A stretch of 64,000 nucleotides of DNA, from contig OZ249437.1 of assembly GCA_965235115.1 (NCBI GenBank), forward strand, positions 11,656,001 to 11,720,000, read 5' to 3'. Source of the stretch: Laetmonice hystrix (taxonomy: Eukaryota). The notes under the pieces are model-generated. The model saw only the letters and a program-made list of their open reading frames with translations, searched no databases and was not told where the DNA came from. Both the position numbers and the translations under genes were made by a program. Positions within the stretch are counted from its first letter, which is position 1; each line of letters begins with the position of its first letter. Shown here piece after piece: positions 4,247 to 59,591 of this stretch.

Positions 4247-7200
4247 TAATAAACAATCGCAAAGATATTGGACCCAGCATCTTGTATATTGTAGGACATA
4301 TATATACAGGGTTTTTTTGTAGGCTGTTGATTTCTTTAACATCAGGATAAGTCTCTGAATCCCCAAAACAAAAGCTTATTCGTCTAATATTTGAATCCCC
4401 AAAACAACACCTTATTCTTCTAATATTTGAAGAGTTTCCATCCAGATAATATAGTGTTGGCAGTGTCCTTTCATTTGTATTTATTCCGTGAAGTATTTTA
4501 AAGCAGTGATTATTCACTGAATTTGAGGTTCTTGAGACCAAAATTTTAGTGATAAATATATAGATCTCGCTGTATGATTTAGAGAGACTGAAATGTTTCT
4601 GCTTTGAAGCAATAACAGGAATAGGAATGCTGTCTGGGAAACATACAAGATGCTGGACCTGACACTTGACATGCATGTTTTTTTTGGGTTTCCCCCCTCC
4701 TTTTTTTCTCTGTTCACATGATACTGTTTTATACATGATTATGTCACTGAGATGCACGTAGTGAATTTAAGGACTTAAATCCTTAAATGTTAAATGCTTC
4801 TTACTTTTGACTTTTTAAGCTGGCTGTACGATCATCATTAAAAGGAAATTCGGAATTTCTTTCAGTTAATAGAGTAACGTTAAATTTTAAGCAAATGTGA
4901 ACTTTACTGTTTTTTGTGCATCATAAGCTTCTGTCACAAATTGAGGCATATGGCATCAGGTAAAGGGAGTGGAAAGGGAACATGTCTTCAGATGACGTTA
5001 GTCTCGGTGGAGTAGGCATTAGTCAGAAGTAAATGGAACGAAATGAGTCACAGGGTTAGACAGTAGAGTTGCTGCCCCAACCGTACATATCTTCATTTTG
5101 TTCTGTTCACAAGTCCAAACCCCTTGTCCCCAGCTATCAAGTTTGCGTGGAACAAAATCATCAAAGTGTCTTTACTGCCTCTATTTTTGACCAAATTTTT
5201 AAGTGGTAAAATGTTATCAGATTTGTTGATAGGGCAGCTCGTTATAAATTATTTCGTTTTCATTAAACAAAGTTAAAAATGTTAGGGTCATTCCGGTGTA
5301 ATCTGGTGGCCAGTCTGAGGATAGCGGCCGTCGTTCACTTTCAGTGAGACAGGCGAACATTTTTAAATGTTGGTTAAATCAGTCCTGAGAGTTCAATACC
5401 AGGAAAAGCAGAGTTAAAAATAGATGGACTATATCAGGTCCTGTCAAGTCTGCTAAAACAGGACACAATTAGAGGGAGAAAGCTACATGGTAGATCTCTA
5501 CCATCATTATTGATTCCTACATAATTGATCTCGATATGTAAACAGTTCAGAGGTATTTGAGTGCAGGCATACCTTTTTTTTTCTTCGCGGAGGGGGGGGG
5601 GGGGTTGCTAAACCGTAAATGGGGATGTCTGTGTGACCCTGTTGCCTGTTTTCTGATCGCTCCAGAAATAGTCGAGTTTTATTTTTTCAGTGCACAAAAA
5701 CGAATGCATTAAACTGAGTTTAAAACTAGGCAAGCCATCTTTTGCGGAAAGACCACAATTAGCTGTGACTAAAGTCGACTGCAGCTGGCGCCTATTGATA
5801 TAGTCATGCAGGTAGACAGGTGGTACTTAGCTAAACTAAACTTGCTAGCAACCCATGTCATCCCAGCGGCCCAGCCCCAGCCCTGTCTACAATGGTATTG
5901 ACATCCTGACCTCAACATTTTGTAAGCTTTGTAAAATTAGAAAAGAAAATGTAAAAAAAAAAAATGTGTGGGTGGGTGAGGGTGCTGGTATCGTAAAAGT
6001 TCCGGTAGTTATTTGATACACTTGTTTGCCAATGCCATATGCCTTCAAGGTGTGAAATTGACCAATGGTTGGATACTTGATACGGTGCATAGATTTGTTG
6101 CCTATTTTTAAGGATTGTGTACTGGTAGATCATGTTAGATGCTAACTTTTAGGTTGGAGTGGGAGTGTAGTTATCTGTAGTTGATGTTCTGTACAGATGC
6201 ACACATTTCCGAGTTCTGCCGGTTAAGGCTCAATCAGTACCAAGTAACAAACAATTGGAAGTGGTTTCTCTAATCAACGTCTCATCATTGTGGATTAATG
6301 AAGCATTGACATGATGTCAGCGGAATGAGCAAGTATTTGAAGGGTCTTGGCTCTGAAATGCTATGATTTTGACACCATTGATAGTTAAGATTTAAATCCA
6401 AACCGCAAGAGTTGTTTTTGAAAATATTAATAATTCTTGGAAAAAAGATTTTTCTGGAATACAGTTTTTTATAAAGAGAACATTATTTGAGAGTTGATTA
6501 AGTAATGATTTCTTTGGAAAATGAACTCTAAGCTGTTGTATAACTTTAACAGAGCAAAACTTCAACAGATTATTCTTAGTATCAAAGTGGTTTTTTTTAA
6601 GAAAAAGTCTGATTGAAAACATTGGAGTTTTATTGTGTTGGTATAGGAATGAAACATTTGTAGTTGCGGCCATTTCCATAACAAAGTGCTGTTGACTGGT
6701 ACGGTAACTCATTATTCTGGGTGTCATATCCAAAATCCTCATTGTTTTATCTGTTTGGTCTGAGAAAGCAAGATGGGTACAGTTCAGCCGACTTTTCCTT
6801 GTTGTGGTCGAGTTGGCAAGCCAAGAAGTTTTTTAAACAGTGATCTTTATTTATTCAAAGAGCACAACCTCGTGATTTTGAATCGTAGAGTTAGAGTTGT
6901 TGCCCTTATTAATTCCTTGCCAGTAATGCTTGACGTCGGATTTTCTCTTAACTCTGCTGTTGGTGTCTTGAATTTGTCTACAAAATATGGAAAGTAAGTG
7001 GAGTTTTGGAAAAGTGATGGTGTTTCCTAAATCAGAATTTGGAAAGGGGCGAATCCTGGGTTATGTTGACAAGGATGACAAGGAAACCATCAAACAATTT
7101 GCTCCAGTTACCTTTCATAGAAAAATTTCTTGTTTTGAACAGAATGAAGCAGAAAATAAATCACAACACTAGAGTGTCGTTGACAGTATTTGGCACTTAC

Positions 7201-25900: not shown

Positions 25901-27353
25901 CCCAGTCGAGATGGCAAACCCATTTATAAGCCGAACTCATCTGCAGTATTCTACGAACCAGGGCAGTCATAAAAATTCCTCCCGCCACGATTTTTCCATC
26001 ACTGGATAGGCCACAAAAGATCCAATTTGTAATTTATATGATTTATATAAATGTATGTATGTATTGGTCATACATGTGCGCGTTCATAAACATGTGTAAA
26101 TAGCTGTCGCCGACTCGGGCTCCGGAACTTCATTACAATGTACGGTTTAAAGGGCACAGACGACGTGCAAGAAATATTCACTTTGCATTTGTACAATACA
26201 GTAATGCGCATGACACCGCATATAACCATGGATCGTAGAGATCCCCCACCTATCCTCAGCAGACAGGGCGGATACAGGATTTTGGAGGAGAAATTCGACA
26301 AAACGGGGTCCAACGTGGTCAATTCAGAAAGTTCTATGAAAAAAAAACCCAGACAGATTTAAGCCATGGAGGTCCTGCCCCCTGCCCCCTGCCCCCTGCC
26401 CCCTGCCACCTGCCCCCGGACCCGCTATAAATTGTATACTATTATTACTATATACAACTGTGGTTTAGAGTTTTTTTTTATCTCTTCATTTTGTAAATTC
26501 TACCCCTGACAAATGAACACTTCTACGAACTCGTCAGGCAAATTAGTCGCCATTTTTGTTTTCATGATCTCCAGCAACATGTAGGAAGGCCCTGCACGAG
26601 GGAATCAATCTATCTCCGTCCACACGGTGAACTTAAAGTTGACCTAATAATTATGTTTAATTAAAGGTGACAAAAGTCCGAGCCTCTCCGCCAAATTCCT
26701 TTTTACTGACACTCTGTGGAACCATCAAGGTCAATAGTGCGGGCACTACACTGCTGCTCCTGTCGGGTCGGTTACCATAGCTACCGCGCAATTACAAAGG
26801 TCTAATAGGATTAAGGTCTAACACCGATGTTTCCGATAACCGGACATTCTTTAAAAAATGCTGTGTCTCCTAAAGAATTACACCGGATAATCTATTTCCC
26901 TGATAGTAGATATACCCTTTTAATAGTTCTAAATTATTGGACTTATTGGGACAAATATGTTGATTTGTAAGTAATACTGCCGTTGGAATAATATTTTCAA
27001 ATACATATGAAGGATCAAATATTAATCTCTAGTATGTTATATAGTAGTCTCTAGTAGTCTAGTAAGTTATGTGACTTTAGCCCCTTGCAGGAAACAACAT
27101 GATTTTTGTAATCACATCTTGGAATTTGATAAAATAATGATAAAAATGAAAGTAATGACACCATCAGCAAAAATAAGATTATACATCGCAACATCTATGG
27201 AATTTTATAGTGACAACAATATTGTCTTTATATTTCTAGCCCCAAATCTAAATGTAACCCCTATAAGTCGGTCCCCAGACCTCCCCCATCCAAAACTAAA
27301 ACCCTACCCATGTCTCAAACTCTAACCCTTGACCCCACTTTCGTGGATTACCT

Positions 27354-27841
27354 GGAGACTACCCCTTTTAGGGGTATACCAGGAACTACCCCATTTAACG
27401 GTATAACAGGGACTGACCCTTTTAGGGGTATACCAGGGACTGGCCCTTTTAGGGGTATACCTGGGACGAACCCTTTTAGAGACATACAAGGGACTGGGCC
27501 TTTTAGAGGCATACTAGGGACTAACCCCTTTATGGTTATACCAGGGACTGACCCTTTTAGGGGAATACCAGGGACTGGCCCTTTTAGGAGCATACCAGGG
27601 ACTAACCCTTTTAGGGGCATACCAGGGACTGACCCTTTTAGGCGCATACCAGGGACTGACCCTTTTAGGGGTATATCGGGGACTGACCCTTTTAGGGGCA
27701 TACCAGAGACTGACCCTTTTAGGGGCATACCAGGAACGAACCCTTTTAGGGACATACCAGCGATTAACCTTATAGGGGCATACCAGGGACTGACCCTTTT
27801 ATGGGTATACCAGGAACTAACACTTTTAGGGGCATACCAGT
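27354..27841. repeat. 27-bp minisatellite (~18 copies)
   Basis: Unit ccttttaggggcataccagggactgac; explains the PFRGIPGTD and MPLKGSVPG ORFs. Confidence 0.95.
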
Positions 27842-28650
27842 ACCGGAAACATGCCGATCCAGCGTGCAGTAGATAGCAGTAGTTTCATTCATTGGTTAAC
27901 AGTGACTGCGCCACCACCACTGCCCGTGTCGGGAGGGTGACCTAACCTACATCAAGGGCCTGTGAAATTCTCAGCTGGACTTGGAGACGTCCAGCGCGGC
28001 TGCCCGATGGATGCATCCCTCCTGGGCTTTTGGCAGAGGACGATAAACCAGTGGGTTCCTCCCGGGAGAGGTCCGGCTCGTCGGTCCGGAGATTTATCAC
28101 GGACGGGCACCTGGCCAGGCGAGGCCGCCGAGACGGGTAGCATCAGGTGGGGGCGGGGGGTACAGGGCGGACTGCTGACACGTGGGTAAGGGGCCGCGGC
28201 TGGGGGGCAGACACGGGGGAGGGCCACCGTGTTTAGCTTGGCTTCGGAACGGCCGCCTGGGACCATAACGCTTAACATCTGATAGATTTATCACGGAAAA
28301 CACCGTCGTTACAGGTCCGAATTTACACTGTAAATTTCTCCCCACTTCATGTCCCGGCCGGTCATTCGACATTTTGACATTGGGTTACATGAATAAAAGG
28401 ACGATATAACGTCTTCAATGGCATGCGAAGTTTTATTTGTTCATAGGAAAATTATAAGCAATTTGGTCCATTGCAACATTCAAGATTGCAAAATATTCTT
28501 TCATGATCATGATCCTGTTACATGACGTAGTAGGCTACATGCAGTGGCTTACAACTGACGGTATCTAACATTCCTAACGATGGATCGTCCAAGTACTTTA
28601 GGCCTATTTGTTTGAGCGAGGTTATTTCTTCATTTTCCGTTTCAATAGAC

Positions 28651-35724: not shown

Positions 35725-37257
35725 GGTATGGTACTACATGTTTACCTGCCTTAGGTATGATACTACATGTCTATACCTCTCCCCAGTACAGTACTACATG
35801 CCTACCTGCCCGTGGGTATGGTACTACATGTCTGTACCTCTCCCCAGTACAGTACTACATGCCTACCTGCCCGTAGGTATGGTACTACATGTTTACCTGC
35901 CCGTAGGTATGGTACTACATGTCTGTACCTCTCCCCAGTACAGTACTACATGTTTACCTGCCCGTAGGTATGGTACTACATGTCTGTACCTCTCCCCAGT
36001 ACAGTACTACATGCCTACCTGCCCGTAGGTATGGTACTACATGTCTGTACCTCTCCCCAGTACAGTACTACATGTCTACCTGCCCGTGGGTATGGTACTA
36101 CATGCCTACCTGCCCGTGGGTATGGTACTACATGTCTGTACCTCTCCCCAGTACGGTACTACATGTCTACCTGCCCGTGGGTATGGTACTACATGCCTAC
36201 CTGCCCGTGGGTATGGTACTACATGTCTACCTGCCCGTGGGTATGGTACTACATGTCTGTACCTCTCCCCAGTACAGTACTACATGTCTACCTGCCCGTA
36301 GGTATGGTACTACATGTTTACCTGCCAGTAGGTATGGTACTTCATGTCTGTACCTCTCCCCAATACAGTACTACATGCCTACCTGCCCGTAGGTATGGTA
36401 CTACATGTTTACCTGCCCGTTGGTATGGTACTACATGTTTACCTGACCGTGGGTATGGTACTACATGTCTGTACTTCTCCCCAGTACAGTACTACATGAC
36501 CTGCCCGTAGGTATGGTACTACATGCCTACCTGCCCGTGGGTATGGTACTACATGTCTATACCTCTCCCCAGTACGGTACTACATGTCTACCTGCCCGTG
36601 GGTACGGTACTACATGTCTGTACCTCTCCCCAGTACAGTACTACATGCCTACCTGCCCGTGGGTATGGTACTACATGTCTGTACCTCTCCCCACTACAGT
36701 ACTACACGTTTACCTGCCCGTGGGTATGGTACTACATGTCTGTACCTCTCCCCAGTAACGGTACCACATGCCTACCTGCCCGTGGGTGTGGTACTACATG
36801 TCTACCTGCCCGTAGGTATGGTACTACATGTCTGTACCTCTCCCCAGTAACGGTACCACATGCCTACCTGCCCGTGGGTGTGGTACTACATGTCTACCTG
36901 CCCGTGGGTACTACATGTCTGTACTTCTCCCCAGTACAGTACTACATGTCTACCTGCCCGTGGGTATCGTACTACATGTCTGTACCTCTCCCCAGTACAG
37001 TACTATACATGCCTACCTGACCGTGGGTATGGTACTACATGTCTGTACTTCTCCCCAGTACAGTACTACATGTGTACCTGCCCGTGGGTGTGGTACTACA
37101 TGTCTACCTGCCCGTAGGTATGGTACTACATGTCTGTACCTCTCCCCAGTAACGGTACCACATGCCTACCTGCCCGTGGGTGTGGTACTACATGCATATT
37201 CCCCCCTAAGAGCGCGCTACTATATGCCTAACTCCCAAAGTACGGTACTACATGCCT
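35725..37257. repeat. Two-subunit 30/31-bp minisatellite (~50 units)
   Basis: Shared core tactacatgtct followed by acctgcccgtgggtatgg or gtacctctccccagtacag. Confidence 0.97.
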
Positions 37258-40200
37258 AAATCCCCCGGACCTGTTGGTCCATATAGGTTCGCCACTACAT
37301 TACTGTCCTCCGACTCATCCAGTATGGTGTGTGCTACATGACGTCCCTCCAAACAATGAAAGGAGCGCAGACGTGCGTCTGACGACCATCATAAAGGTAT
37401 CATGAATAAATCAACGACCTCTCTGTGAAACAGGAGGGAGGTTGACGGATCGTGTTTAGTGGGAACCAACATCACGGCACGTACCGGCATATAACCATAA
37501 TATGGCGGCAGTGTGGGCCGTGTGGCAGCCGCCCTGGCGACTGATTGCGGATAGGTCACGTTTGCTGTATACAGGTCCCCGGGAGACATACTGCTAAATT
37601 AATTGAAGGTCTGCCTGATGCATAACAACCCCTCTGACTGCCCCAACTCTCCTGGAAGGAAAGTGGGAGGGGTTAAATGCTAACTGATGTATGGAGAGTA
37701 TATTAAAGTACACGTTGCCATTGAATTGACGGTCCATTGACCTTATAATGATATTCTTATGTCTTTCACATACAAAGCCACTGTTACCTGGTTTTCCCCA
37801 TTGAATGGAGAGTAGGGCCTACTTAATATGTACACTGATTTACACTGCTCCCTGGCGAAATATACGAGTTATCCTTCACCTAATAATCCCACGCAAGCCG
37901 TAAAAATGCTCCCAGATAGGTTTTGGGTATTTTGAAGGGCCAGTGGTTCTGGTAGAACTATACGGCCCGGTTTTAAAAAGCTTTGATTGAATGTGGTTCT
38001 GCTCCTCATTAACCGCTCACCTTCTTATGGTCGGAGAAATTACGGCTCACGCAAATAAAGGTGAACGGATAAACGTCTCCTTGCGACATCATGCGATGGC
38101 ATGTTTCATGATAGGCTGCCATGATCATGGCAGACTTTTTGATAACCCTGGCGCCGGGCAAACGGGTTGAGTCACCTGTCTGCGGTTCACCATTGGTCAC
38201 AGCTCATGTGGGTATATACGGGGTTCTGTACTGACAGGTCATATCAGGTAATCTGTCCAAGCAATTGTATTAAACGTGAAAGTAGGCTTCCAGAGGCTTT
38301 AACTTAGCGGAGAAACATTTTAATGCGTCATTATTGTGTAAACACGATTTCTATCTTAGGTAACGTTCGCTGTATTCAGCTAACCATTACCGCAACAATG
38401 TTAGGGTCTTTTTGGCGCTAATGCGTGCCTACTCGAAGTTCTTACAACACGAGTCTTATTGAACGCAGCGGGATGGAGCATTGCGGGGCCATCAACGGCC
38501 GTTCGGTAGAACTCGCGTGAGAGAAACCGTAATCCGCCACCCCGTTCACCGTGACCCCCGGAGGGTGGGGGTGGGGTGTGGGTATACGGGGGTCGCCCCC
38601 AAGGTGAGCACCATCCGACTCGGCGTGGTTCAAAGTGTCAGCATCTTACCTATGGGGGGTAGGTTTCATCCGCCCACCCACCAGACTCGAGTATGCCGCT
38701 ACACAAATATTTGGTTTTCTTCACTGGCGGCTCTCTGGAATCTGCAACGGTGTAACACAAGGTACGTCTATCAGCGACGTGAAGTGGGGGAAGCCAAGGG
38801 TCATGAGGAGATGGGAAATGGGGGAGGAGGAGGAGGTGGAGGAGAAGGAGGAGGAGGAGGAGGAAGGGAAGAGGCGGGAGGGAGGGAAGGAGGGAGGTAG
38901 CAACCAAAGGCAATAAGAACCTGTAGGCATCAGACCTGCTGGAGGGACGTTAAACTCGATGGTTAACATCAAAGATGTCTTCTAAAAAGTCTGCTACCGT
39001 GTACCAATCTTAATAACCCCTACAAATCCCGTCTTATGTTTGTTTAATGTTTGTTTAATGGTTTGTTTGAAGGATCCTGGTCAGTTTACAGAGGGCAGTT
39101 CGCTGTAAAAATGTTATGTGGCCTCCATGTGTGGGTTGGACGAGAAATGTAAAGTCATAGGGCCTAAGTCGAGGAATATAGTGTATGGTTGCCTTCCGTT
39201 TGTAAATAGAAACAGATGATGAAAAATGACTGTTCTATAACATTGACAGTGCTTTACATAACGCACGCCGCGGCCTTTACAGGCGGTCTCATTGATAATA
39301 CTGGACCCAAATTTGGTAAACTCGCAATGTCGCCCAACAATATAATGTTCTTAATCGTTCTCGAAGGTTTGGTGGCCGGCTTTTTCCAAGACTGTTTTAT
39401 AGTGTTTTCCCACTACAACTATTTAGCGACCTTTTCCACGTCGGCACTGGAAATGGAAAGATTTACACGAACCAAGAAAAAGTAGTAGAAGAAGAATTTT
39501 GGCCTGGCTAATCTGTCATTCTATTGACAGAAAACTATGCATCCATGGTAAACTTTATATTCATAACCTTACGTGTAAAAATGAGATATTAGGAATACAT
39601 GTTTGAAGTTATGTGATTCAATCATGTTGTTTCATAGTCTAATGCATAATATCCGGTAATATTATTATCACTTTTGAAAACATGCTCAATGTCCGTATAT
39701 ACCATAACGACGTCTGTCGTGCGTGCTTTCAGCTGTTTCCCACTCATACCTGGACGTATTCCGCCTGCCTGTCAACTCACAGGCTAATACGTCCTCACCT
39801 GCACGACGTCGTTTGATCCACTAATGAGGACGTATATCTTGCTTTAGATCGTCTCTACATCTCAGCGCCATACGATCGGCATTGGTCCCGTCAGCCTGGG
39901 AGCTGCTGCGGCGGTACCCGCAGGAAAACGACCTCATTAAGTGGCGTGTAACGGCAGTCGAGGTTTATATCAATATTTGTACAGTATCGGGTATTCCCGT
40001 TTTACAAGCAGTCCTCGGTCTGAGAAAAGAAGACTCCTCACCCTCCTTTACCAGCGACCAGAACATCGGGATCATATCTCACGAACTAATCAGCCTGATG
40101 TACGCATTCCAGGTCGGGGATTGCTGATTTGAACAGTGTCCCCGCCTGCAGTATCGCCTCCTGGTTAGAAATCTATAATATGAATTGCGCTTACACGAAT

Positions 40201-50310: not shown

Positions 50311-52449
50311 CGAGCTTTAGCTTCTTGCCCTCATCATGAGTTCAACCATTATTAGCCCAGGTAACGTCATTGTCCCGTAGTGGCACAGTGACATAGATGT
50401 CATTTTATGGGTGGATAGCCTACCCCCTCCTTACATAACAAATAAGAGAATAGTAGATCTAGGCCTACCAGGAAAAGGTGAAAACGTGATCACCTCGACT
50501 AGGCCTACACCGTATTCGAACTTATTTTTGACCACGTTGGATACCTTTTTGGCAGGTTTCCCCCTTGGACACCCCCCTCCCTTTCCAAAATCCTGAGCCT
50601 GTCATTAGACACCACTCCTGATAGGTGATCTTCCTGTCCTAAACATTCAGGTATAATGTCTACTGCACTGGATCCGACCGTTCAAGGTGTCAGTGTCGTT
50701 TGTCCTCCAGGGGTCACACACATCACACGTATAATACACGCCGCCTAGGCCCACACACCCACACTCCTACACCTGACGGCACCACACCGCACTCACTCCT
50801 TGAGCACCAGTCTAGTTCAGAAACACCGTGCACCTTGACAGACACCAACTCGGGTACGGCCTTGTCAATACTCGCAGCAGTTCACAGGGCTGCCTCACGA
50901 TACACCGACTCCCAGCGGGCACACACGTGCTGCCATCTAGTGAGCGTATCTCTCTCAACTAGGGAGTCGTACGTTTCAATCATACCTCGCGTTGCTCGTG
51001 AATTCAGAGAGGAAACGCCTTACCGACTGAACAGTACAGGTGATATCTCACCTCGAAATGCTAATCGGCCTCCGGCAGGTGATACTCTGCATTTGAAATG
51101 CATCGGTCATGGCATTCATCGGAGGCTTTCTGAGGAGTTCAGCCGCTGACTGATAATCCTCCCCGACAAGATTATCCTGGGCTAATCCAGACCCTGCAAT
51201 TCGTTATGGTAATTGACTCAGTAGAAAAGATGGTTTCCAACGAAAGAGGTTTTCATTCTTAGCACAACTACAAACGTCTATCTGACTGATTACAATTCTA
51301 CCAGTAGATTTTTCCAGTCTAACTTCTGAAGGGACAGGACACTTCAACCGTGGTAAAATCTTCTGGTACCTCCTCTTGACACTCGACATGCTATGGATCT
51401 TCGACTAATTCAGGACATGAATGAAGTAGGAAGAGAAAATGTCAGTATTGATGTGTTTATTATGGTTACGATACTGTACAGTAAGACCAAACATGTAGAC
51501 AGTAACACCACCAACATGATTGAAGGAGGAGAATAGAAATAGAGGGTTGGAATAAAAAAAAGTGACATCTCGTACAATTAGGGTCCCTAATCTGGCCAAA
51601 ATAAATAAATAAAATAAATAAATAAAAGTTTACAATACAAATGCTACATACATATTGAAATATGGAAAAAGCAAGTACCCTAGCTATGATTAATTGATTA
51701 GTAAGCGACGGCGCTGGTCGGATGCATGATGGTCTACCAGTTCTGTCAAAGTCAAGTTATTCATCAGAGTGGTGCAGGAGAGTGGAACCTCCTGTGAAAC
51801 ATACATTATGTTCAATGAATTGTCACTAATTATCCTGATTCTTCCAAATAGTGGATTTCTATTATAGAAACTTATTGCTACCATCTGCTTTCGTGTGCTG
51901 TTTAGTTAATAGTGACTCAAAATACTTACTGCTTGTAAAGATACTGAATCAAATTATGATTAAGCTATGATTTGATAATCCATTTCTTTAAAATACTTTT
52001 AAAGATCCCATTAAACGCTGATTCACATGAGGGAATGATTTGTTTTATGTAACCTACAGAATAATCTATGAACTGAATCTTATATTTGAAGTCATCGCCG
52101 TTTTACAACATAACAATATAAACTGTCGTCGAAGCATAATTCCGATGCCAACGCACTGTTTCATTTTGACGCCTTGAAAATAAACCTCTAGAAATTAACC
52201 AATCAGATTTTGCCTATTCAGTGACCCTGATAAAGTAAGGAGAGAGATAACTTTTCTACTGTGTATCACTTCTGTTTTTAAATGATACATCTCAGTATGA
52301 CTTTTTAGTATTTCTATCACTTATTAATTTCTGATATTAAATACAAATGTACAGAAATGGTAAAAGAAATCGATGATATAGTTGATAATCTAAATGTTTT
52401 CCTACCAAAAATCGTATCTTAATATGATTTCCCTCGTGCCATAAACACT

Positions 52450-52619
52450 AAAGGCAAATTTCGACCAACGAAATGGGGTTTCACGACACACAACGGACGG
52501 TTATGCAAATGCTGTGACCTAGATGGCACGGCAGGTAAGCAGGGTATAAAAGTGAGTAGGCCAGAAAGATTGGGCCTTCTTGAAAGTGGACGATCAAAAC
52601 AAGGAGCGGCGTTTTCGTT
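52450..52619 (+). repeat. Repeat A1 (170 bp; identical copy at 56252-56421) containing octamer and TATA box
   Basis: ATGCAAAT 52503-52510, TATAAAA 52545-52551; no mismatch seen against A2. Confidence 0.95.
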
Positions 52620-53198
52620 AGAGTTTCTAGCTAGTGAAGCGTGACTACGGCGGCGGAGCAAGTGGGTGCTGTCGTGACGGTGGAGAGAGCTGGGTTGAAA
52701 CGTTTAGCGTTTTGTTGCATGTCTCGTCGGTGGTGCAACGGTCGGACGGTTTGGGTGCTCGTGACGAAAGTGTGGGACACGTGGTGGAGCTGAAGTCTTC
52801 GTGGAATTTCGTTGGAGTGTGGTACATGTAAGTTTGACTATGCTGGTGGAAATTTGGACTGGAAAAGTTGGCCCTATTTTGACCCAGAGGGCTGATCAGT
52901 GCGGTTGTTAAAGCAGTACAGCTGTTACGTTAGTGTGACGGTGCAGACAGTGTTGGTGTCGGCGAGAGAAGTGGGGTGCACGTTTTATACATTGGGTCTT
53001 GAAATAATCGTGGTTGCTCGGCTGTCTTGCCGCTTTGTGTATGGGATGGTTGACCAAGGTTTAGGCCTGTTGGTGGCTCGTGGTAAAGCTGTGCTCGTTA
53101 TGGAAAGACTGCCCCGGCAGGGTTGGGGGTTGGGGGGTGGGGGCTGTGCTCGGTTGAAAGACTGCTTGGTAATGTGGGGGAGCAGTGCTACTGCTAGT

Positions 53199-53970
53199 GG
53201 GGGGAAGACTGCGCAGCAGTTGGGGGGTTCGGAGCTTGGGGAAGGCTGCTTCGGCAGTGTGGGGGTTCTGTGCTTGTGGGGGAAGACTGCTTCGGCAGTG
53301 TGGGGGTTCTGTGCTTGTGGGGGAAGACTGCTTCGGCAGTGTGGGGGTTCTGTGCTGTGGGGGAAGGACTGCGCAGCAGTTGGGGGTTCTGAGCTTGTGG
53401 GGGATGACTGCTTCGGCAGTGTGGGGGTTCTGTGCTTGTGGGGGAAGACTGCTTCGGCAGTGTGGGGGTTCTGTGCTGTGGGGGAAAGACTGCGCAGCAG
53501 TTGGGGGTTCTGAGCTTGTGGGGAAGACTGCTTCGGCAGTGTGGGGGTTCTGTGCTGTGGGGGAAGACTGCTTCGGCAGTGTGGGGGTTCTGTGCTGTGG
53601 GGGAAAGACTGCGCAGCAGTTGGGGGTTCTGAGCTTGTGGGGAAGACTGCTTCGGCAGTGTGGCGGTTCTGTGCTTGTGGGGGAAGACTGCTTCGGCAGT
53701 GTGGGGTTCTGTGTTGTGGGGGAAGACTGCTTCGGCAGTGTGGGGGTTCTGTGCTGTGGGGGGAAGGCTGCTTCGGCAGTGTGGGGGTTCTGTGCTGTGG
53801 GGGAAGGCTGCTTCGGCAGTGTGGGGTTCTGTGTTGTGGGGGAAGACTGCTTCGGCAGTGTGGGGGTTCTGTGCTGTGGGGGGAAGGCTGCTTCGGCAGT
53901 GTGTTGTGTGGGGGGAAGGCTGCTTCGGCAGTGTGGGGTTCCGTGTTGTGGAGGGAAGTCTGCGCGACAG
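53199..53970 (+). repeat. G-rich ~40-bp minisatellite inside the element, ~20 units
   Basis: gggggaagactgcttcggcagtgtgggggttctgtgcttgt and variants; source of the 295-414 aa low-complexity ORFs. Confidence 0.95.
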
Positions 53971-55922
53971 TTGGGGGGGGGGGGGGTGCGTGCTCGAGGT
54001 GAAGACTGCGTTGGTAGTCAGGGGGGACCCGGGCTTGCGGGGGGAGGGGGCGGCGGCGGCGGTCTGGGGGGAGCGTCTCATGGTGAAGACTGTGGGGGGG
54101 GGGGGGGGGGTTACAAGTTTGGGGTTTACCTTTGGGGAAAAGTGTTACTATATTGTTGTTATTATTAGTGTTATTAGAGGTATTGGTTATTATTGTTAGT
54201 GATATTGTTAGCAGCTTGAATGGTAACATTGTGAAAGGGGTAGTTTTATCATTTTTACGAAAGTATTGTTAAACGTATCGTGTGACCGTAATTTAATTTA
54301 TAATCGAGTTTCAAAAAAAATTATTATTGGATTTTCCTATAATTATTCAGTTTATTGATTATTACCAATATTCCTAAAATCGCTGCTGTTATTATTAAAT
54401 ATTTTGGTCCTAAGTATTGATTGTGTGTGTTTGTGTTTTTTTTTAAATAGCGTTATTGTATTTAGTAGTGGTACTGTTAGTAGTTTGATTAATATTATAA
54501 ATATTAATATTAATATTATAGTATGTGTTAGGATGTTTAATTAGTTTTCTTTCAGGAGATGATTTGAATGTTATTCACTTGTATGCTTCTTTTGGTCGCT
54601 GGTGGTTGTTCCTATCACATTAGGGTCAGGGGATATCCGGTAAAAGGCAGCAGGGGGGTTAGCTGTGGTGGTTCCCATGTCGTTCGGTATGGGTTGAAGT
54701 GGCTCGGGTGGTGCCGTGGGGCTTGTGTAAGGTGGTGCCGGCAGGCTGGTGATGGTGGTGCCGGTAGGCTGGTGATTGTGGTGCCGTTTGGCTGGTGATG
54801 CCGGGGGGGACTGAGGATGTTGCTTCCGTTGGGATTGTAATGGCCGGTAGGCTGACTAGGGTGGTGCCGGTAGGCTGGCGATGGTGGTCCGGGTAGTCTG
54901 CGGTGTTGGTGACGTTATGTTGGGTAGTGGTTGTGCCGATGGGCTGGCGGTGGTGGTGCCGGTAGACTGACGGTGTTTGTGACGTTAGGTTGGCGATGGT
55001 GTGGCGGTAAGTTGATGATGTTGGTGTCGTTAAGTTGGCGATGGTTGTGGCGGTAAGTTGACGAGTTTGGTGTCGTTAAGTTGGTTGTACGGTATTACGC
55101 TAGTGTGTTTCTTTTTCATGCTGCGTCGGCCATGGGACGACCGGAGGTGGTGGCGTTGATATTGGTGTTGTGGTGGACCGTCGTCGTGAGATAACAGGTG
55201 CCTCAGCGGGGTTGCCTGATGGAATAAGGAGATGTGGCGTCGGTGGGGACAAGTCGTTACCATTCAAGAAGATGGATTTGGAGTCCGAGAAGACAGAATT
55301 CACGACGTTCAAGGGAATGGACAACCTGTCTGAGCGTGGGCATGAAGAAATGGTTGGGTATTTCAAACTGGGTGTTGGAATGATTGGGTGAATAATAGAT
55401 GATGGGGAAGGTCCTGTTCCAAGTGGTGGAAATGGTTGAATAGTTCAAACGGATGATCGGGGTCGCCTTTACGCTTTTCCAGGGTTTTACCTACAGTAGG
55501 ATTTATCCCTGGTTTTTGGTGCGGGAGGTCGATCGGTGCCTGATGGTTAAGGTTTTTTTTTTAATTTAGGTACGATAGCTAGAGATGTCCGATAACTTGG
55601 GATGGCATATTGGTTAAGTGCTGGTGTGGATGATTATCTTGCGGGGGCTAATGATTGGTGTCCCAGTATATATTGTCGGCTCGGTGTGTTGGCTATGAGG
55701 TGATACTATAAGCATGGTATGTGGGATGTCTGTATAGGATAATACTCTTGGAAGAAGGAAGGGGTACGATGTGAGGGAAAATATATTTATTGCCAGCGTG
55801 TGCATGATCCGGTGGGGTATCTTGTTTTCCTGCCACCACGCTCCTGTGGAGTAACAATTCGGAGGGTTTATGTGCCTCGCCGGTTTGGTTGGGTGGGCCC
55901 GGGATGACGTTTGTCATCCGGT

Positions 55923-56254
55923 TGGCGTTTCGGGCCCAAATATGGGGCCTGGGGAAAAGTGATGATGTAATTTGACGTTCAATTGGAGTGCGCGAAATTT
56001 GACTTTCCTCACCTGAAGCCTCAGGGGGGATTCGTCATCAAGTCGGAAGATTGTGGATAGGTAACCTGGTGATTGTAATTCTACATTATAATGTGAATAT
56101 TTAACATCAACATCACCTGTGGGGTTCTCTCACCTGAAGCTTCAGGGGGGAATCTGTGATGTTGATGAGTTTCTCGGCACGGTCACGGCTGCGCCAGTAG
56201 ATCAATAAAAGTATCTACATACAATCCTTGTGTTGGGAGTTGTGTGTTGTGAAA
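55923..56254 (+). repeat. Repeat B1 (332 bp; identical copy at 56678-57009) with AATAAA and GU-rich downstream element
   Basis: AATAAA 56204-56209 followed by ttgtgttgggagttgtgtgttgtg; no mismatch seen against B2. Confidence 0.95.
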
Positions 56255-56421
56255 GGCAAATTTCGACCAACGAAATGGGGTTTCACGACACACAACGGAC
56301 GGTTATGCAAATGCTGTGACCTAGATGGCACGGCAGGTAAGCAGGGTATAAAAGTGAGTAGGCCAGAAAGATTGGGCCTTCTTGAAAGTGGACGATCAAA
56401 ACAAGGAGCGGCGTTTTCGTT
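56252..56421 (+). repeat. Repeat A2
   Basis: Offset 3802 from A1; directly abuts B1 via shared AAA. Confidence 0.95.
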
Positions 56422-56677
56422 TCCCACCGCCTCCCCTTCTCCCCCAAGAGTATTGGAGTCCGGACACTTACGCGGGGAGGGGGGGGGGGTCCTGCAATAA
56501 ATTTTAGTTTAGCCTTATTCCTGTAGTTTAACGGACACAATAAAGGGTGTGATGTATATCCCATTGCGTTGTAAGTTGGTAGAATGTGTATATTGTGATG
56601 GGTAGTGTGTTCCTGTGGTGGAATGTGGGGTTCTCTTGCCATAATTTTGGAAGGGTGTTCTTGTATGGTTTCGCAGA

Positions 56678-57009
56678 TGGCGTTTCGGGCCCAAATATGG
56701 GGCCTGGGGAAAAGTGATGATGTAATTTGACGTTCAATTGGAGTGCGCGAAATTTGACTTTCCTCACCTGAAGCCTCAGGGGGGATTCGTCATCAAGTCG
56801 GAAGATTGTGGATAGGTAACCTGGTGATTGTAATTCTACATTATAATGTGAATATTTAACATCAACATCACCTGTGGGGTTCTCTCACCTGAAGCTTCAG
56901 GGGGGAATCTGTGATGTTGATGAGTTTCTCGGCACGGTCACGGCTGCGCCAGTAGATCAATAAAAGTATCTACATACAATCCTTGTGTTGGGAGTTGTGT
57001 GTTGTGAAA
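56678..57009 (+). repeat. Repeat B2 (right end of element)
   Basis: Offset 755 from B1; AATAAA 56959-56964. Confidence 0.95.
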
Positions 57010-58032
57010 TGGCGCGAGGGTATATAAAATTTCGGCATATATGAATATGTTACATGGAATAATCCGATTTTTATCTACCGCGGCCAACCATACCCAAAAT
57101 CCTGGACATAGACACATGTTTTACCCTTCATTCATGGATATACAATGCAATAATACATTTTCCATATGTTGCTGTTTATACTTTCAATCAAGATCTGATA
57201 TTTCTCATGTCGATTCCACCCTTTAATATAGAACTAAATTCCTTATTCTAAACTGGAAAAAACAGATGCACACTCCTGTATGAAAAGGAAATGTATATAT
57301 TTTATAAGAGCAACCCCGGATAGAGTAATAAAATAAAGATAAATTTCATCATTCAAACCGTGCTAAGTGTGTTTAAATACTTTACTAGTGCGACATTTTC
57401 TCAGCGATATTTGAAATGGCGCAGGCAAGGCAGGTGCATGCTGATCTCAGAGGACAAGCGCTGTGAATAAGAATATAGATGGCAATCACTGACGACGAGT
57501 AAACGTGACACACTCTAACACCTGATATGACACTAGGCCCGAGAGTCTGTTTCAAACGGAATGGATTTTGACACGCAATAGAAAACAGAACAAGTGACTG
57601 GACACAGGATATGGCTAACTGTTTAACAGGTCACTTCCTCGAGTCTCAGTACGCATGTCAACCGCTCATACCCAATAACAACTTGCCCAAACATTATGAA
57701 TTCTGATCCTAGAAGCAATTATTTTCCAATAAATCAAGACCGTTCTAAAAGAAATACAATTACTGTTGGCCTCAGTCGGAGCTAGCTGGAAAAAGGACTT
57801 TAAAATGTGGATGGAAGAAGACGACCCGCATTTGGAATATTGTTGTTTGTTTTCACAACATGCTCCCTCATTGTTATGTTGTGTTTGTTTAAAATGCACA
57901 GTATTATTATTATAATAATATAGAAATATTCATTATTTCCTATTTTAAGCCACTTTCATGCCAGGCACTAAATGGACTTCAATCCTCAATATCACCCAAA
58001 CAGACCCGGTGAACTTGATATTCATTTATTAG

Positions 58033-59591
58033 GGAATCAGTGTACTATAAACCATACAATAATTCTAGGAATCAGTGTACTATAAACCATACAATAATTG
58101 TAGGAATCAGTGTACTATAAACCATACAATAATTGTAGGAATCAGTGTACTATAAACCATACAATAATTGTAGGAATCAGTGTACTATAGACCATACAAT
58201 AATTGTAGGAATCAGTGTACTATAAACCAACAATAATTGTGATCAGTGTACTATAAACCACACAATAATTGTAGGAATCAGTGTACAATAAACCATACAA
58301 TAATTGTAGGAATCAGTGTACTATAGACCATACAATAATTGTAGGAATCAGTGTACGAAAAACCATACAATAATTGTGATCAGTGTACTATAAACCATAC
58401 AATAATTGTGATCAGTGTACTATAAACCATACAATAATTGTAGGAATTAGTGTACTATAAACCACACAATAATTGTAGGAATCAGTGTAGTATAAACCAT
58501 ACAATAATTGTGATCAGTGTACTATAAACCATACAATAATTGTAGGAATCAGTGTACTATAAACCACACAGTAATTGTAGGAATCAGTGTACTATAAACC
58601 ACACAATAACTGTAGGAATCAGTGTACTATAAACCACACAATAACTGTAGGAATCAGTGTACTATAAACCACACAATAATTGTAGGAATCAGTGTACTAT
58701 AAACCACACAATACCTGTAGGAATCAGTGTAATATAAACCACACAATAATTGTAGGAATCAGTGTACTATAAACCACACAATAATTATAAACCGCACAAT
58801 AATTGTAGGAATAGTGTACTATAAACCACACAATAATTCTAGGAATCAGTATATTATAAACCAGACAATAATTGTAGGAATCAGTGAACTATAACCACAA
58901 GGTAATTGTAGGAATCCGAGTACGGGACTATAAACCACACAATAATTCTGAGAATCAGTGTACGGTAAACCACCCAATAATTGTAGGAACCAGTGTAATA
59001 TAAACCACACAATAATTGTAGGAATCAGTGTACTATAAACCACACAATAACTGTAGGAATCAGTGTACTCTAAACCACACAATAATTGTAGGAATCAGTG
59101 TAATATAAACCACACAATAATTGTAGGAACCAGTGTACTATAAACCACACAATAATTGTAGGAATCAGTGTACTATAAACGACACAATAATTATAGGAAT
59201 CAGTGTACAATGAACCACACAATAATTCTAGGAATCAGTGTACGATAAACCACACAATAACTGTAGGAATCACTGTACTATAAACAATACAATACTTGTA
59301 GGAATCAGTGTACTGTAAACCACACAATAATTGTAGGAATCAGTGTACTATAAACCACACAATAATTGTAGGAATAAGTGTACTATAAACCACGTGTTCA
59401 CAGTAAGTGTAGGAATCAGTGTACTATAAACCACACAATAATTGTAGGAATCAGTGTACTATAAATCACACAATAACTGTAGGAATCACTGTACTATAAA
59501 CAATACACTACTTGTAGGAATCAGTGTACTGTAAACCACACAATAATTGTAGGAATCAGTGTACTATAAACCACACAATAATTTTAGGAAT
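58033..59591. repeat. 35-bp minisatellite (~45 copies)
   Basis: gtaggaatcagtgtactataaaccacacaataatt with variants. Confidence 0.97.

What the first reader, a model, noticed from the sequence alone, without database searches (positions are those of the whole stretch)
52450..57009. Young, non-coding split-direct-repeat element (A...BA..B) of the tyrosine-recombinase retrotransposon type
Seen: a 170-bp A at the left end, a 332-bp B at the right end, and an internal fused B-A copy followed by a unique 256-bp spacer. I see no mismatch in either repeat pair. The same AAA occurs at the left end (52450-52), the internal B/A junction (56252-54) and the right end (57007-09), so it is a shared core rather than a target-site duplication. 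A carries octamer+TATA; B carries AATAAA+GU-rich tract. Established: this split-repeat layout defines PAT (Panagrellus), TOC1 (Chlamydomonas), kangaroo (Volvox) and Ngaro YR retroelements, which integrate a circular intermediate through a short core. TOC1 is likewise non-autonomous with an internal tandem-repeat train. Inference: a recently mobilised, TOC1-like non-autonomous parasite of an animal PAT/Ngaro element; I know of no description of such a family in this kind of genome.
Basis: partly seen in the sequence, partly recalled or inferred. Interest (0 to 1): 0.85.

Follow-up and report, generated by a model that had tools for sequence, protein, structure and literature searches.

The report
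Young non-coding split-repeat retroelement
This is a real, very recently inserted copy of a small family of protein-less mobile elements built like tyrosine-recombinase retrotransposons (Ngaro/PAT/TOC1 type). It is still present/absent between the two chromosome copies of the sequenced animal, so it is a live but not unprecedented parasite whose helper element I could not find.

Summary
A (170 bp) lies at 52450-52619 and 56252-56421. B (332 bp) lies at 55923-56254 and 56678-57009. Both pairs are 100% identical, a 256-bp spacer follows A2, and AAA sits at both ends and at the B/A junction.

It is not a local duplication. The genome holds 12 full copies at different loci with the same A..BA-spacer-B layout, plus three A-internal-B copies, one solo A-spacer-B and some fragments. 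None of them encodes a protein.

Contigs from the same sample join 52449 directly to 57007, and the left flank is unique in the assembly. The insertion is therefore allelic, precise, and has no target-site duplication.

Changes that distinguish subfamilies sit in both members of each repeat pair, as with LTRs, which points to replication through RNA.

Probable RNA contigs begin just after the TATA box in A, run across the B1/A2 junction, and use a GT donor in the leader.

The best reading is a non-autonomous DIRS-order (Ngaro/PAT-like) retroelement, comparable to TOC1 and SIRE.

No helper element sharing A or B was found.

The "AAA core" shrinks to one invariant A plus a target preference for NAA.

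This scan has already noted other protein-less split-repeat elements elsewhere in this genome. Verdict: new member of a known kind.

The parts
52450..52619 (+). A1, the left terminal repeat (170 bp). It acts as the promoter module, with octamer ATGCAAAT at 52503-52510 and TATAAAA at 52545-52551.
   Evidence: 100% identical to A2; motif positions. The octamer is kept even in relatives at 75-79% identity. The probable-RNA contig starts at 52590, about 45 nt after the TATA box.
52620..52827 (+). Leader, a 5' exon-like segment. It ends at a consensus splice donor CAT|GTAAGT, with the GT at 52828.
   Evidence: The donor is conserved in most copies. The X4 contig ends its match here and continues into a sequence that in the genome follows TTCCAG, which is a GT-AG junction.
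53192..53977 (+). G-rich tandem array with a 40/41-bp period, about 20 copies.
   Evidence: The open frames over it exist on both strands and are repeat-derived.
54707..55084 (+). Degenerate tandem array with a 23-bp period.
55463..55529 (+). Motif of about 67 nt, containing a hairpin, that is shared at 93-96% identity with many unrelated loci in the genome.
   Evidence: 373 first-look candidates; hits to query positions 364-430. Loose ends show other families continuing differently on either side.
55923..56254 (+). B1, the internal copy of the right repeat (332 bp). It carries two hairpins, AATAAA at 56204 and a GT-rich tail.
   Evidence: 100% identical to B2. Palindromes (I1). Signal positions.
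56239..56296 (.). 16-nt inverted repeat that spans the B1|A2 junction. The arms are 56239-56254 (the end of B, including AAA) and 56281-56296 (inside A).
   Evidence: 94% complementary, 26 nt between arms. (single-stranded DNA fold -20.3 kcal/mol, z -4.3, 0 of 200 shuffles as good). One pair shows a G-C to A-T difference between related families.
56252..56421 (+). A2, the internal copy of the left repeat, fused to B1 through AAA.
   Evidence: The fused junction occurs exactly 13 times in the genome.
56422..56677 (+). Spacer between A2 and B2 (256 bp), conserved in every full copy.
   Evidence: 93-100% identity in the 12 full copies; it follows all 13 BA junctions.
56678..57009 (+). B2, the right terminal repeat, with AATAAA at 56959-56964. 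The element ends ...GTTGTGAAA.
   Evidence: Probable-RNA depth falls to zero after the bin 56784-56967.
52450..57006 (+). The 4557 bp that are absent from the empty-site allele. The boundaries can slide by up to 3 nt because of the AAA.
   Evidence: table 5: a joint from 52449 to 57007 skips 4557 bases with 3 shared letters, in X1, X2 and X3 at depths 38.6, 26.7 and 44.5. The left flank is unique in the assembly.

Best explanation
This is a non-autonomous retrotransposon of the DIRS order (tyrosine-recombinase retroelements with split direct repeats: Ngaro, PAT-like, VIPER). It has lost all coding sequence. It keeps what look like the cis-acting parts: a promoter in A, a leader with a splice donor, a polyadenylation module in B, and the internal B1-A2 junction.

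Proposed cycle:
1. Transcription starts about 30 nt after the TATA box in A1. It reads through the B1 poly(A) site and ends at the poly(A) site in B2. The RNA therefore lacks the first ~125 nt of A and the last ~25-35 nt of B. It still carries both, intact and joined, in the internal B1-A2 junction.
2. A reverse transcriptase supplied in trans copies the RNA. Template switching between the repeated segments regenerates complete A and B at the ends, so A1=A2 and B1=B2 in every new copy.
3. The complete DNA is inserted without target duplication immediately 3' of an A, usually NAA. Presumably a tyrosine recombinase supplied in trans acts on a joined B-end/A-start site.

What is shown: the architecture, dispersal, a precise polymorphic insertion, absence of TSDs, concerted repeats, and absence of coding capacity. 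Transcription across the junction and use of the leader donor are indicated only by contigs of a run whose RNA nature is itself inferred.

What is inferred: reverse transcription, a circular or joined intermediate, the recombinase step, and the identity of the helpers.
For: - Exact A..BA-spacer-B layout.
- 12 full copies at unrelated loci with the same layout, a conserved spacer and different flanks, 93-100% identical to this copy.
- Exactly 13 BA junctions in 627 Mb.
- An empty-site allele in the same sample joins 52449 to 57007 with one AAA, and the left flank is single-copy in the assembly.
- No TSD in 12 of 12 full copies. In L065 the element sits in a tandem repeat whose neighbouring unit shows the uninterrupted target ...gtg.CAA.acag....
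- A1=A2 and B1=B2 are identical in 7 of 12 copies.
- Subfamilies differ by 2-8%, and those differences sit in both members of a pair: 57 element-by-site cells against 10 in only one member, leaving out the oldest copy.
- Octamer, TATA and AATAAA plus GT-rich tract are placed as a transcription unit.
- Contigs of run X4 cover no unique flank. They start at 52590, span B1/A2 (56120-56421) and A2/spacer/B2 (56392-56707), and one shows a GT-AG splice from the leader donor.
- There is no coding capacity. Five open frames tested, three of them inside the element, have no Pfam hit, and the one small conserved frame shows no purifying selection.
- The genome holds at least 97 tyrosine-recombinase matches, some in open frames of 1044-1451 aa.
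- The literature defines this layout and lack of TSD as the DIRS-order signature (PMC8969392, PMC4157794, PMC3266345). It also describes non-autonomous relatives: TOC1 (PMC9940879) and SIRE, which equals the A2..B2 region of VIPER (PMC6681497).
Against: - No element with related A, B, leader or junction and RT/YR genes was found. The closest A/B relatives (75-79% identity) are themselves ORF-less remnants.
- All 13 BA junctions are followed by the spacer, and no permuted A-spacer-BA-internal-B copy exists. A circle with two identical BA junctions should integrate through either one.
- Where the left trinucleotide differs from AAA (13 informative ends), the left end is always target-type. The right end is never target-type: it reads AAA, apart from one single-base variant just upstream of the three As (GTAAAA in L062). 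A symmetric 3-nt recombinase overlap would give both outcomes.
- X4 is not recorded as RNA. Its RNA nature is inferred, and contigs cannot fix transcript ends.
- No direct evidence for cDNA or circles.
Confidence: 0.77

Rival explanations
1. It is a DNA-only mobile unit, a Crypton-like non-autonomous element. A tyrosine recombinase would excise and reinsert the whole A..BA..B segment as double-stranded DNA without any RNA step.
For: Precise insertion without TSD next to a short A-rich site. Many stand-alone YR open frames of about 336-408 aa in the genome. An inverted repeat spans the junction.
Against: DNA copying would not keep A1=A2 and B1=B2 identical while subfamilies diverge by 2-8%. The promoter-in-A and poly(A)-in-B arrangement, with the internal junction carrying exactly the parts a transcript would lack, is explained only by an RNA cycle. 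Cut-and-paste would not readily give 12 copies in nested subfamilies.
Confidence: 0.08
2. It is a head-to-tail dimer of a simpler A-x-B unit (one long, one internally deleted), made and spread by another retroelement system. Candidates are a Penelope-like element with pseudo-LTRs, an LTR-derived TRIM/LARD, or LINE-mediated retroposition.
For: Formally A-int-B plus A-spacer-B is a tandem of two units. Single A-int-B copies (three) and a single A-spacer-B copy exist. One old relative (L074) is flanked by an 8-bp direct repeat, GTACCTGA.
Against: All 12 copies share the same fixed boundaries rather than variable 5' truncations. There is no TSD and a precise empty site. No hammerhead ribozyme or any Rfam match, and no tRNA. 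There are no TG..CA ends, and on reading the sequence beside the repeats I see no primer-binding site or polypurine tract. There is no variable poly(A) tail. The spacer arrangement is old, being present in relatives at 73-79% identity. The single-unit copies are the older ones and are explained by B1xB2 or A1xA2 recombination.
Confidence: 0.06
3. The family's helper, at least for the recombinase, is the multi-copy stand-alone YR gene family whose open frame begins at a conserved splice acceptor. The copy on contig C2... C12, where the family's own leader is spliced to that YR exon, would be a hybrid or ancestral master rather than a chance nesting.
For: A spliced contig joins the leader donor to the acceptor TTCCAG|ATCCGG.... 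That acceptor lies about 0.3 kb upstream of a PF00589 match at 6 of its 8 loci (no YR match was listed near C10:3227444 or C19:18173493). One of them is 10.6 kb downstream of, and on the same strand as, the C12 copy's A/leader. The consensus donor is conserved in a non-coding leader.
Against: The other seven YR loci have no A, leader, B or pre-B similarity nearby. The C12 copy is old (about 95% identity), lacks A2-spacer-B2, and is stretched to 33 kb by insertions, so nesting in the same orientation is a 1-in-2 coincidence. No RT was seen next to these loci (though only 150 of 4701 candidates were scored).
Confidence: 0.12
4. It is an assembly artefact or a local tandem duplication confined to this locus.
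For: Perfect repeats can come from mis-assembly.
Against: The same layout occurs at 12 loci on 10 contigs with different flanks. Short-read contigs independently span B1/A2 and A2/spacer/B2.
Confidence: 0.01

Closest known systems
Ngaro and PAT-like elements (DIRS order, split direct repeats A1-[ORFs]-B1A2-B2)
   Same: Identical repeat topology, with the internal B1A2 junction near the 3' end, followed by a short stretch and B2. No target-site duplication. A short A-rich junction and target nucleotide(s). Low copy number. Solo A..B remnants are scattered in the genome, as reported for Cafeteria Ngaro (PMC8547959, PMC4157794, PMC8969392).
   Different: No gag, RT/RNase H, YR (or methyltransferase) genes at all. 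The interior is made of tandem repeats and AT-rich filler. Without proteins it cannot be assigned to Ngaro rather than PAT.
TOC1 of Chlamydomonas reinhardtii
   Same: A non-autonomous DIRS-order element (PMC9940879) with the A...BA..B layout and a unique stretch between A2 and B2. The layout details are from my memory of Day et al. 1988 and were not checked here.
   Different: Green alga versus this animal-type genome, with no sequence relationship. TOC1 has a candidate autonomous relative (TOC3); none was found here.
SIRE/VIPER of Trypanosoma cruzi
   Same: VIPER has split direct repeats, and the short non-autonomous SIRE corresponds to its A2..B2 region (PMC6681497). This family likewise leaves a solo A-spacer-B unit (C3:41103586-41104344), and older relatives of that form exist.
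   Different: SIRE is high-copy and short. Here the mobile unit is the full 4.5-6.5 kb A..BA..B, and solo units are rare (1-5).
DIRS1-like elements
   Same: Integration is proposed through a 3-bp junction sequence identical to a genomic trinucleotide, without TSD. Individual copies often differ between their start and end trinucleotide, as seen here (PMC3266345, PMC7192593).
   Different: DIRS1-like elements have inverted terminal repeats plus an internal complementary region, not split direct repeats.

Membership tests
DIRS-order split-direct-repeat retroelements (Ngaro / PAT-like / VIPER) | Repeat topology A1 - internal - B1A2 - (short) - B2, with A1=A2 and B1=B2 | tested here: met
   for this copy, and for 11 further copies.
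DIRS-order split-direct-repeat retroelements (Ngaro / PAT-like / VIPER) | Insertion without target-site duplication, at a short sequence shared with the element's B/A junction | tested here: met
   The empty-site allele has one AAA. 12 of 12 full copies lack TSDs. The base before GGC is A in 17 of 17 left ends, but the full trinucleotide is shared in only 5 of 17.
DIRS-order split-direct-repeat retroelements (Ngaro / PAT-like / VIPER) | Encodes RT/RNase H and a tyrosine recombinase (plus gag; methyltransferase in PAT) | tested here: not met
   No ORF beyond repeat-derived frames in any of the 12 copies. No Pfam hit for the frames tested, and no selection on the small conserved frame. It can therefore only be a non-autonomous derivative, not an autonomous member.
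DIRS-order split-direct-repeat retroelements (Ngaro / PAT-like / VIPER) | An autonomous relative with the same termini in the same genome (needed to call it a parasite of a given family) | tested here: not met
   A, B, leader, pre-B region, spacer and junction searches return only this family and ORF-less relics. None lies beside a YR or RT match, except for the nested C12 case. The searches score only the best candidates, and no further genome sequence could be fetched.
DIRS-order split-direct-repeat retroelements (Ngaro / PAT-like / VIPER) | Replication through RNA, with both repeats regenerated each cycle | tested here: inconclusive
   Concerted A1/A2 and B1/B2 changes and probable transcripts spanning the junction fit this. 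No cDNA or circle was observed.
Penelope-like elements with pseudo-LTRs | Hammerhead ribozyme in the repeat; variable 5'-truncated upstream copy; TSDs | tested here: not met
   No Rfam match at E<=1. Boundaries are fixed in all copies. No TSD.
LTR retrotransposon derivatives (TRIM/LARD) | Two complete LTRs with TG..CA ends, a PBS and PPT, and a 4-6 bp TSD | tested here: not met
   The ends read GGC...GAAA, with no TSD and no tRNA match. On reading the sequence I see no tRNA-complementary site after A1. The repeat is split, not complete, at each end.

The most novel reading that the evidence does not exclude
The element is one leg of a divided retrotransposition system. In this genome RT, recombinase and cis-acting RNA would have come apart into separate families: recombinase-less Ngaro lineages (noted elsewhere in this scan), a stand-alone recombinase gene family expressed through a conserved splice acceptor, and protein-less split-repeat elements like this one. 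The conserved leader splice donor of this family would be a working part of that arrangement, because it can drive a spliced, retrovirus-like subgenomic recombinase mRNA, as seen at the C12 locus. Also, because no permuted copies exist, integration would not go through the textbook circle with two equivalent junctions.
Probability: 0.12. Interest if true: 0.7.

Novelty: new member of a known kind. Interest (0 to 1): 0.45.

Why it matters
Tyrosine-recombinase retrotransposons are the least understood class of retroelements. Their replication model (sub-genomic RNA, ends restored from an internal junction, circle, recombinase integration) rests mostly on sequence logic and on one experimental system, Dictyostelium DIRS-1.

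This family is small (12 full copies), currently polymorphic, transcribed and protein-less, with perfectly defined ends and a known empty site. That makes it a clean natural reporter. Any new insertion must use helper enzymes in trans. Its cis requirements (junction hairpin, leader, B module) are compact enough to test.

Two observations constrain the model. There is a strict single permutation (0 of 13 permuted). The left junction is always target-type, and the right end is never target-type.

For genome annotation, such elements are invisible to ORF-based tools.

Tried and rejected
- **Partner by DNA similarity.** I searched with A, B, the pre-B region, the leader, the spacer and the 24-nt junction with up to 3 mismatches. 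Only this family and ORF-less relics came back.
- **Partner by protein family.** PF00589 gave at least 97 matches and PF00078 gave 150 scored of 4701 candidates. None lies beside family sequences except C12:24923470, which sits inside an old copy swollen by insertions.
- **Distant A/B relatives L074 and L075 (75-79% identity).** They have no ORFs of 120 aa or more that bear on this, and no split-repeat structure.
- **Longer copies.** The 0.9-kb extra segment in L067/L070 and the 4.35-kb insertion in the spacer of L071 are non-coding.
- **Small conserved frame 55170-55391.** Non-synonymous changes equal or exceed synonymous ones, and one copy has indels, so it is not a gene.
- **RNA families.** No Rfam match (so no hammerhead) and no tRNA.
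- **The 67-nt shared motif.** I followed it through an expressed loose end to nine other loci, none beside YR or RT matches.
- **Organism identity.** No recognisable coding exon in the window, and run names are coded.
- **Limits.** Only one sample's runs were available, all as contigs, so transcript ends and population frequency could not be measured.


Full report
**1.

- A1 52450-52619 and A2 56252-56421 are identical over 170 bp.
- B1 55923-56254 and B2 56678-57009 are identical over 332 bp.
- B1 and A2 share the AAA at 56252-56254, and AAA also stands at 52450-52452 and 57007-57009.
- A 256-bp unique spacer (56422-56677) separates A2 from B2.
- A carries ATGCAAAT (52503) and TATAAAA (52545). 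B carries AATAAA (56204 and 56959) followed by a GT-rich tail.
- The 3.3-kb interior is 69% G+T on the + strand.
- The interior holds a 40/41-bp array (53192-53977) and a 23-bp array (54707-55084).
- The only long open frames are repeat-derived and open on both strands. The frames tested have no Pfam match.

**2. It is a dispersed family, not a local duplication**

- Searching the window's own 627-Mb genome with A and B finds the same order A...BA-spacer-B at 11 further loci on 10 contigs.
- Lengths are 4.48-4.61 kb (seven copies including this one), 5.38-5.42 kb (three), 6.5 kb and 7.8 kb.
- The 7.8-kb copy carries a 4.35-kb insertion in its spacer.
- The longer copies carry an extra 0.9-kb non-coding segment.
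- The fused B/A junction occurs exactly 13 times in the genome.
- The spacer follows every one of those junctions.
- The leader after A occurs 15 times, always in this family.
- Three older copies are A-internal-B only: C8:26284137-26294148, C1:29827641-29844487 and C12:24912156-24945983. All three are swollen by insertions.
- One locus is a solo A-spacer-B (C3:41103586-41104344).
- These single-unit copies are what B1xB2 or A1xA2 recombination would leave. They parallel the "isolated AB repeats" of Cafeteria Ngaro (PMC8547959) and SIRE, which corresponds to the A2..B2 region of VIPER (PMC6681497).

**3. The insertion is precise, recent and allelic**

- Contigs of three runs from one sample join 52449 to 57007. 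They skip 4557 bp with three ambiguous letters, at depths (38.6, 26.7, 44.5) similar to the flanks. They also carry flank SNPs.
- The left flank occurs once in the assembly, so these contigs are the other allele, not a paralogue.
- The empty site reads ...AACACT-AAA-TGGCGC....
- None of the 12 full copies has a target-site duplication.
- In L065 the element sits in a tandem repeat whose neighbouring unit shows the intact target gtg.CAA.acag. The target's CAA stays on the left and the element's AAA stands on the right, with nothing lost or duplicated.
- Over 17 left ends the base before GGC is always A. The one before that is A in 12. The third is free.
- The right end is GAAA in 16 of 17 ends and AAAA in one.
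- DIRS1-like elements show the same kind of mismatch between start and end trinucleotide in individual copies (PMC3266345, Table 3).

**4. The repeats evolve in concert**

- In 7 of 12 copies A1=A2 and B1=B2 without a single difference over 502 bp.
- Subfamilies nevertheless differ from this copy by 2-8% in A and B.
- Those diagnostic changes are present in both members of the pair: 57 element-by-site cells against 10 in only one member, leaving out the oldest copy.
- A mutation in one repeat of a master can reach the other repeat only if each new copy rebuilds both from one template. LTR retroelements do this by strand transfer.
- This is the main argument for an RNA/cDNA cycle and against plain DNA transposition. 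It remains an inference from pattern.

**5. Transcripts**

- Run X4 (59 Mb of contigs, kind not recorded) has no depth on either unique flank. It also has none over 52920-54759, although DNA runs cover that stretch heavily. It is therefore not a genomic library in proportion to copy number.
- One X4 contig matches 52590-52809 and then continues GTGCAT-ATCCGGCATTCC....
- Copies L025 (C12) and L067 read ...GAATTTGTGCAT|GTAAGT.
- The genome has TTCCAG|ATCCGGCATTCC... at eight loci.
- This is a canonical GT-AG junction, so X4 is almost certainly RNA.
- The contig's variants fit the C12 copy best: 12 mismatches and no gap, against the 11 mismatches and no gap reported.
- The C12 acceptor lies 10.6 kb downstream on the same strand.
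- X4 contigs start 45 nt after the TATA box. They span B1/A2 (56120-56421) and A2/spacer/B2 (56392-56707). Depth stops after the bin containing the B2 AATAAA.
- This fits a transcript from A1 to B2 that reads through B1, which is what the split-repeat model needs.
- Contigs cannot fix RNA ends, and B1 and B2 are indistinguishable, so I rate this as suggestive.

**6. The helper was not found**

- No element with related A, B, leader, pre-B region, spacer or junction carries genes.
- The nearest A/B relatives (75-79% identity; L074, L075 and others) are ORF-less relics.
- The genome is rich in candidates. There are at least 97 PF00589 matches, some in frames of 1044-1451 aa. There are 4701 RT candidates.
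- Earlier notes of this scan report intact Ngaro elements and recombinase-less Ngaro lineages elsewhere in the genome (not checked here).
- The acceptor used by the spliced contig heads a family of eight loci. At six of them it lies about 0.3 kb upstream of a recombinase match in a frame of about 319-408 aa.
- Seven of the eight have no family sequence nearby. The C12 case is therefore most simply a recombinase-bearing element nested, in the same orientation, inside an old copy whose promoter and donor still work.

**7. Features that bear on mechanism but are unexplained**

- A 16-nt inverted repeat (56239-56254 / 56281-56296) places the B|A boundary at the top of a stem (z -4.3). One base pair differs in a compensatory way between related families, but those arms come from different copies.
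- No permuted copy exists (0 of 13). A circle closed B2 to A1 would carry two identical junctions.
- At 13 informative left ends the left junction is always target-type and the right end is never target-type. It reads AAA, apart from one single-base variant just upstream of the three As (GTAAAA in L062). A symmetric 3-nt overlap with heteroduplex resolution would give both kinds.
- Together these suggest that the joining step is polar, or that the intermediate is not the symmetric circle of the textbook model. Linear single-stranded cDNA intermediates have been reported for DIRS-1 (PMC7192593).

**8. Comparison, novelty and score**

- Topology, lack of TSD and the short junction/target nucleotides match the DIRS-order split-repeat elements (PMC4157794, PMC8969392).
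- Lack of genes makes this a non-autonomous derivative, like TOC1 (PMC9940879) and SIRE (PMC6681497).
- Penelope pseudo-LTR, LTR-derivative and artefact readings fail their defining tests.
- It cannot be placed in Ngaro rather than PAT without proteins.
- This scan has already flagged other ORF-less split-repeat elements in the same genome. One follow-up reached the same verdict, also without finding a helper.
- I therefore class it as a new member of a known kind, with moderate interest as an active, compact natural reporter for this poorly understood class.

Noticed in passing
G000 C5:12876476(-), C5:34593156(+), C6:20111255(-), C10:3227444(-), C12:24923145(+), C13:6358897(-), C19:17723558(-), C19:18173493(-): A family of eight loci shares the sequence TTCCAG|ATCCGGCATTCCGATCACTGCTCG. 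At six of them a tyrosine-recombinase (PF00589) match in an open frame of about 319-408 aa lies about 0.3 kb downstream. The AG is used as a splice acceptor in an RNA contig, so this recombinase may be expressed from a spliced, subgenomic-like mRNA. I know of no such report for DIRS-order elements.
   Followed up: partly
window 55463-55529: A motif of about 67 nt with a CCAGGG...CCCTGG hairpin recurs at 93-96% identity at many unrelated loci (373 first-look candidates). It is expressed in other contexts: loose ends at 55465, 55494 and 55523. One such context occurs at nine loci.
   Followed up: partly
L030 = G000 C4:40254995-40258167, array C4:40257276-40259410: The last 56 nt of a B-like repeat (poly(A) signal to GT-rich end) has been amplified into a tandem satellite of about 35 or more units, next to an old A-spacer-B relic.
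   Followed up: no
L074 (G000 C2:2095000-2104000), relic at about locus 4538-5310, minus strand: An old A-spacer-B relative (75-78% identity) is flanked on both sides by the same 8 nt, GTACCTGA. This is either a target duplication (a different insertion route) or a longer core in that older family.
   Followed up: no
L050:1019-1194 (G000 C12, about 24945170-24945345): A 176-bp insertion with terminal inverted repeats (CCCTGGTTTTTAGTT...AACTAAAAACCGGG), looking like a MITE, interrupts the old C12 copy.
   Followed up: no
window 57987-59591: A 35-bp tandem array (about 44 copies, 84% matches) lies 1 kb downstream of the element and is unrelated to it.
   Followed up: no
window 27310-27876 and 35919-37259: Open frames made of short peptide repeats (GTDPFRGIP-like and VLHVYLPVGM-like), open on more than one frame or strand. 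They are probably minisatellites rather than genes; the one frame tested (27310-27876) has no Pfam match.
   Followed up: partly
G000 C3:8599012-8599481(+) and C1:23729025-23730035(-): Two loci share collinear pieces of the region just upstream of B, including the last 48 nt before B at 96% identity. They have no detectable B after it, so they may belong to a different family that shares this segment.
   Followed up: no
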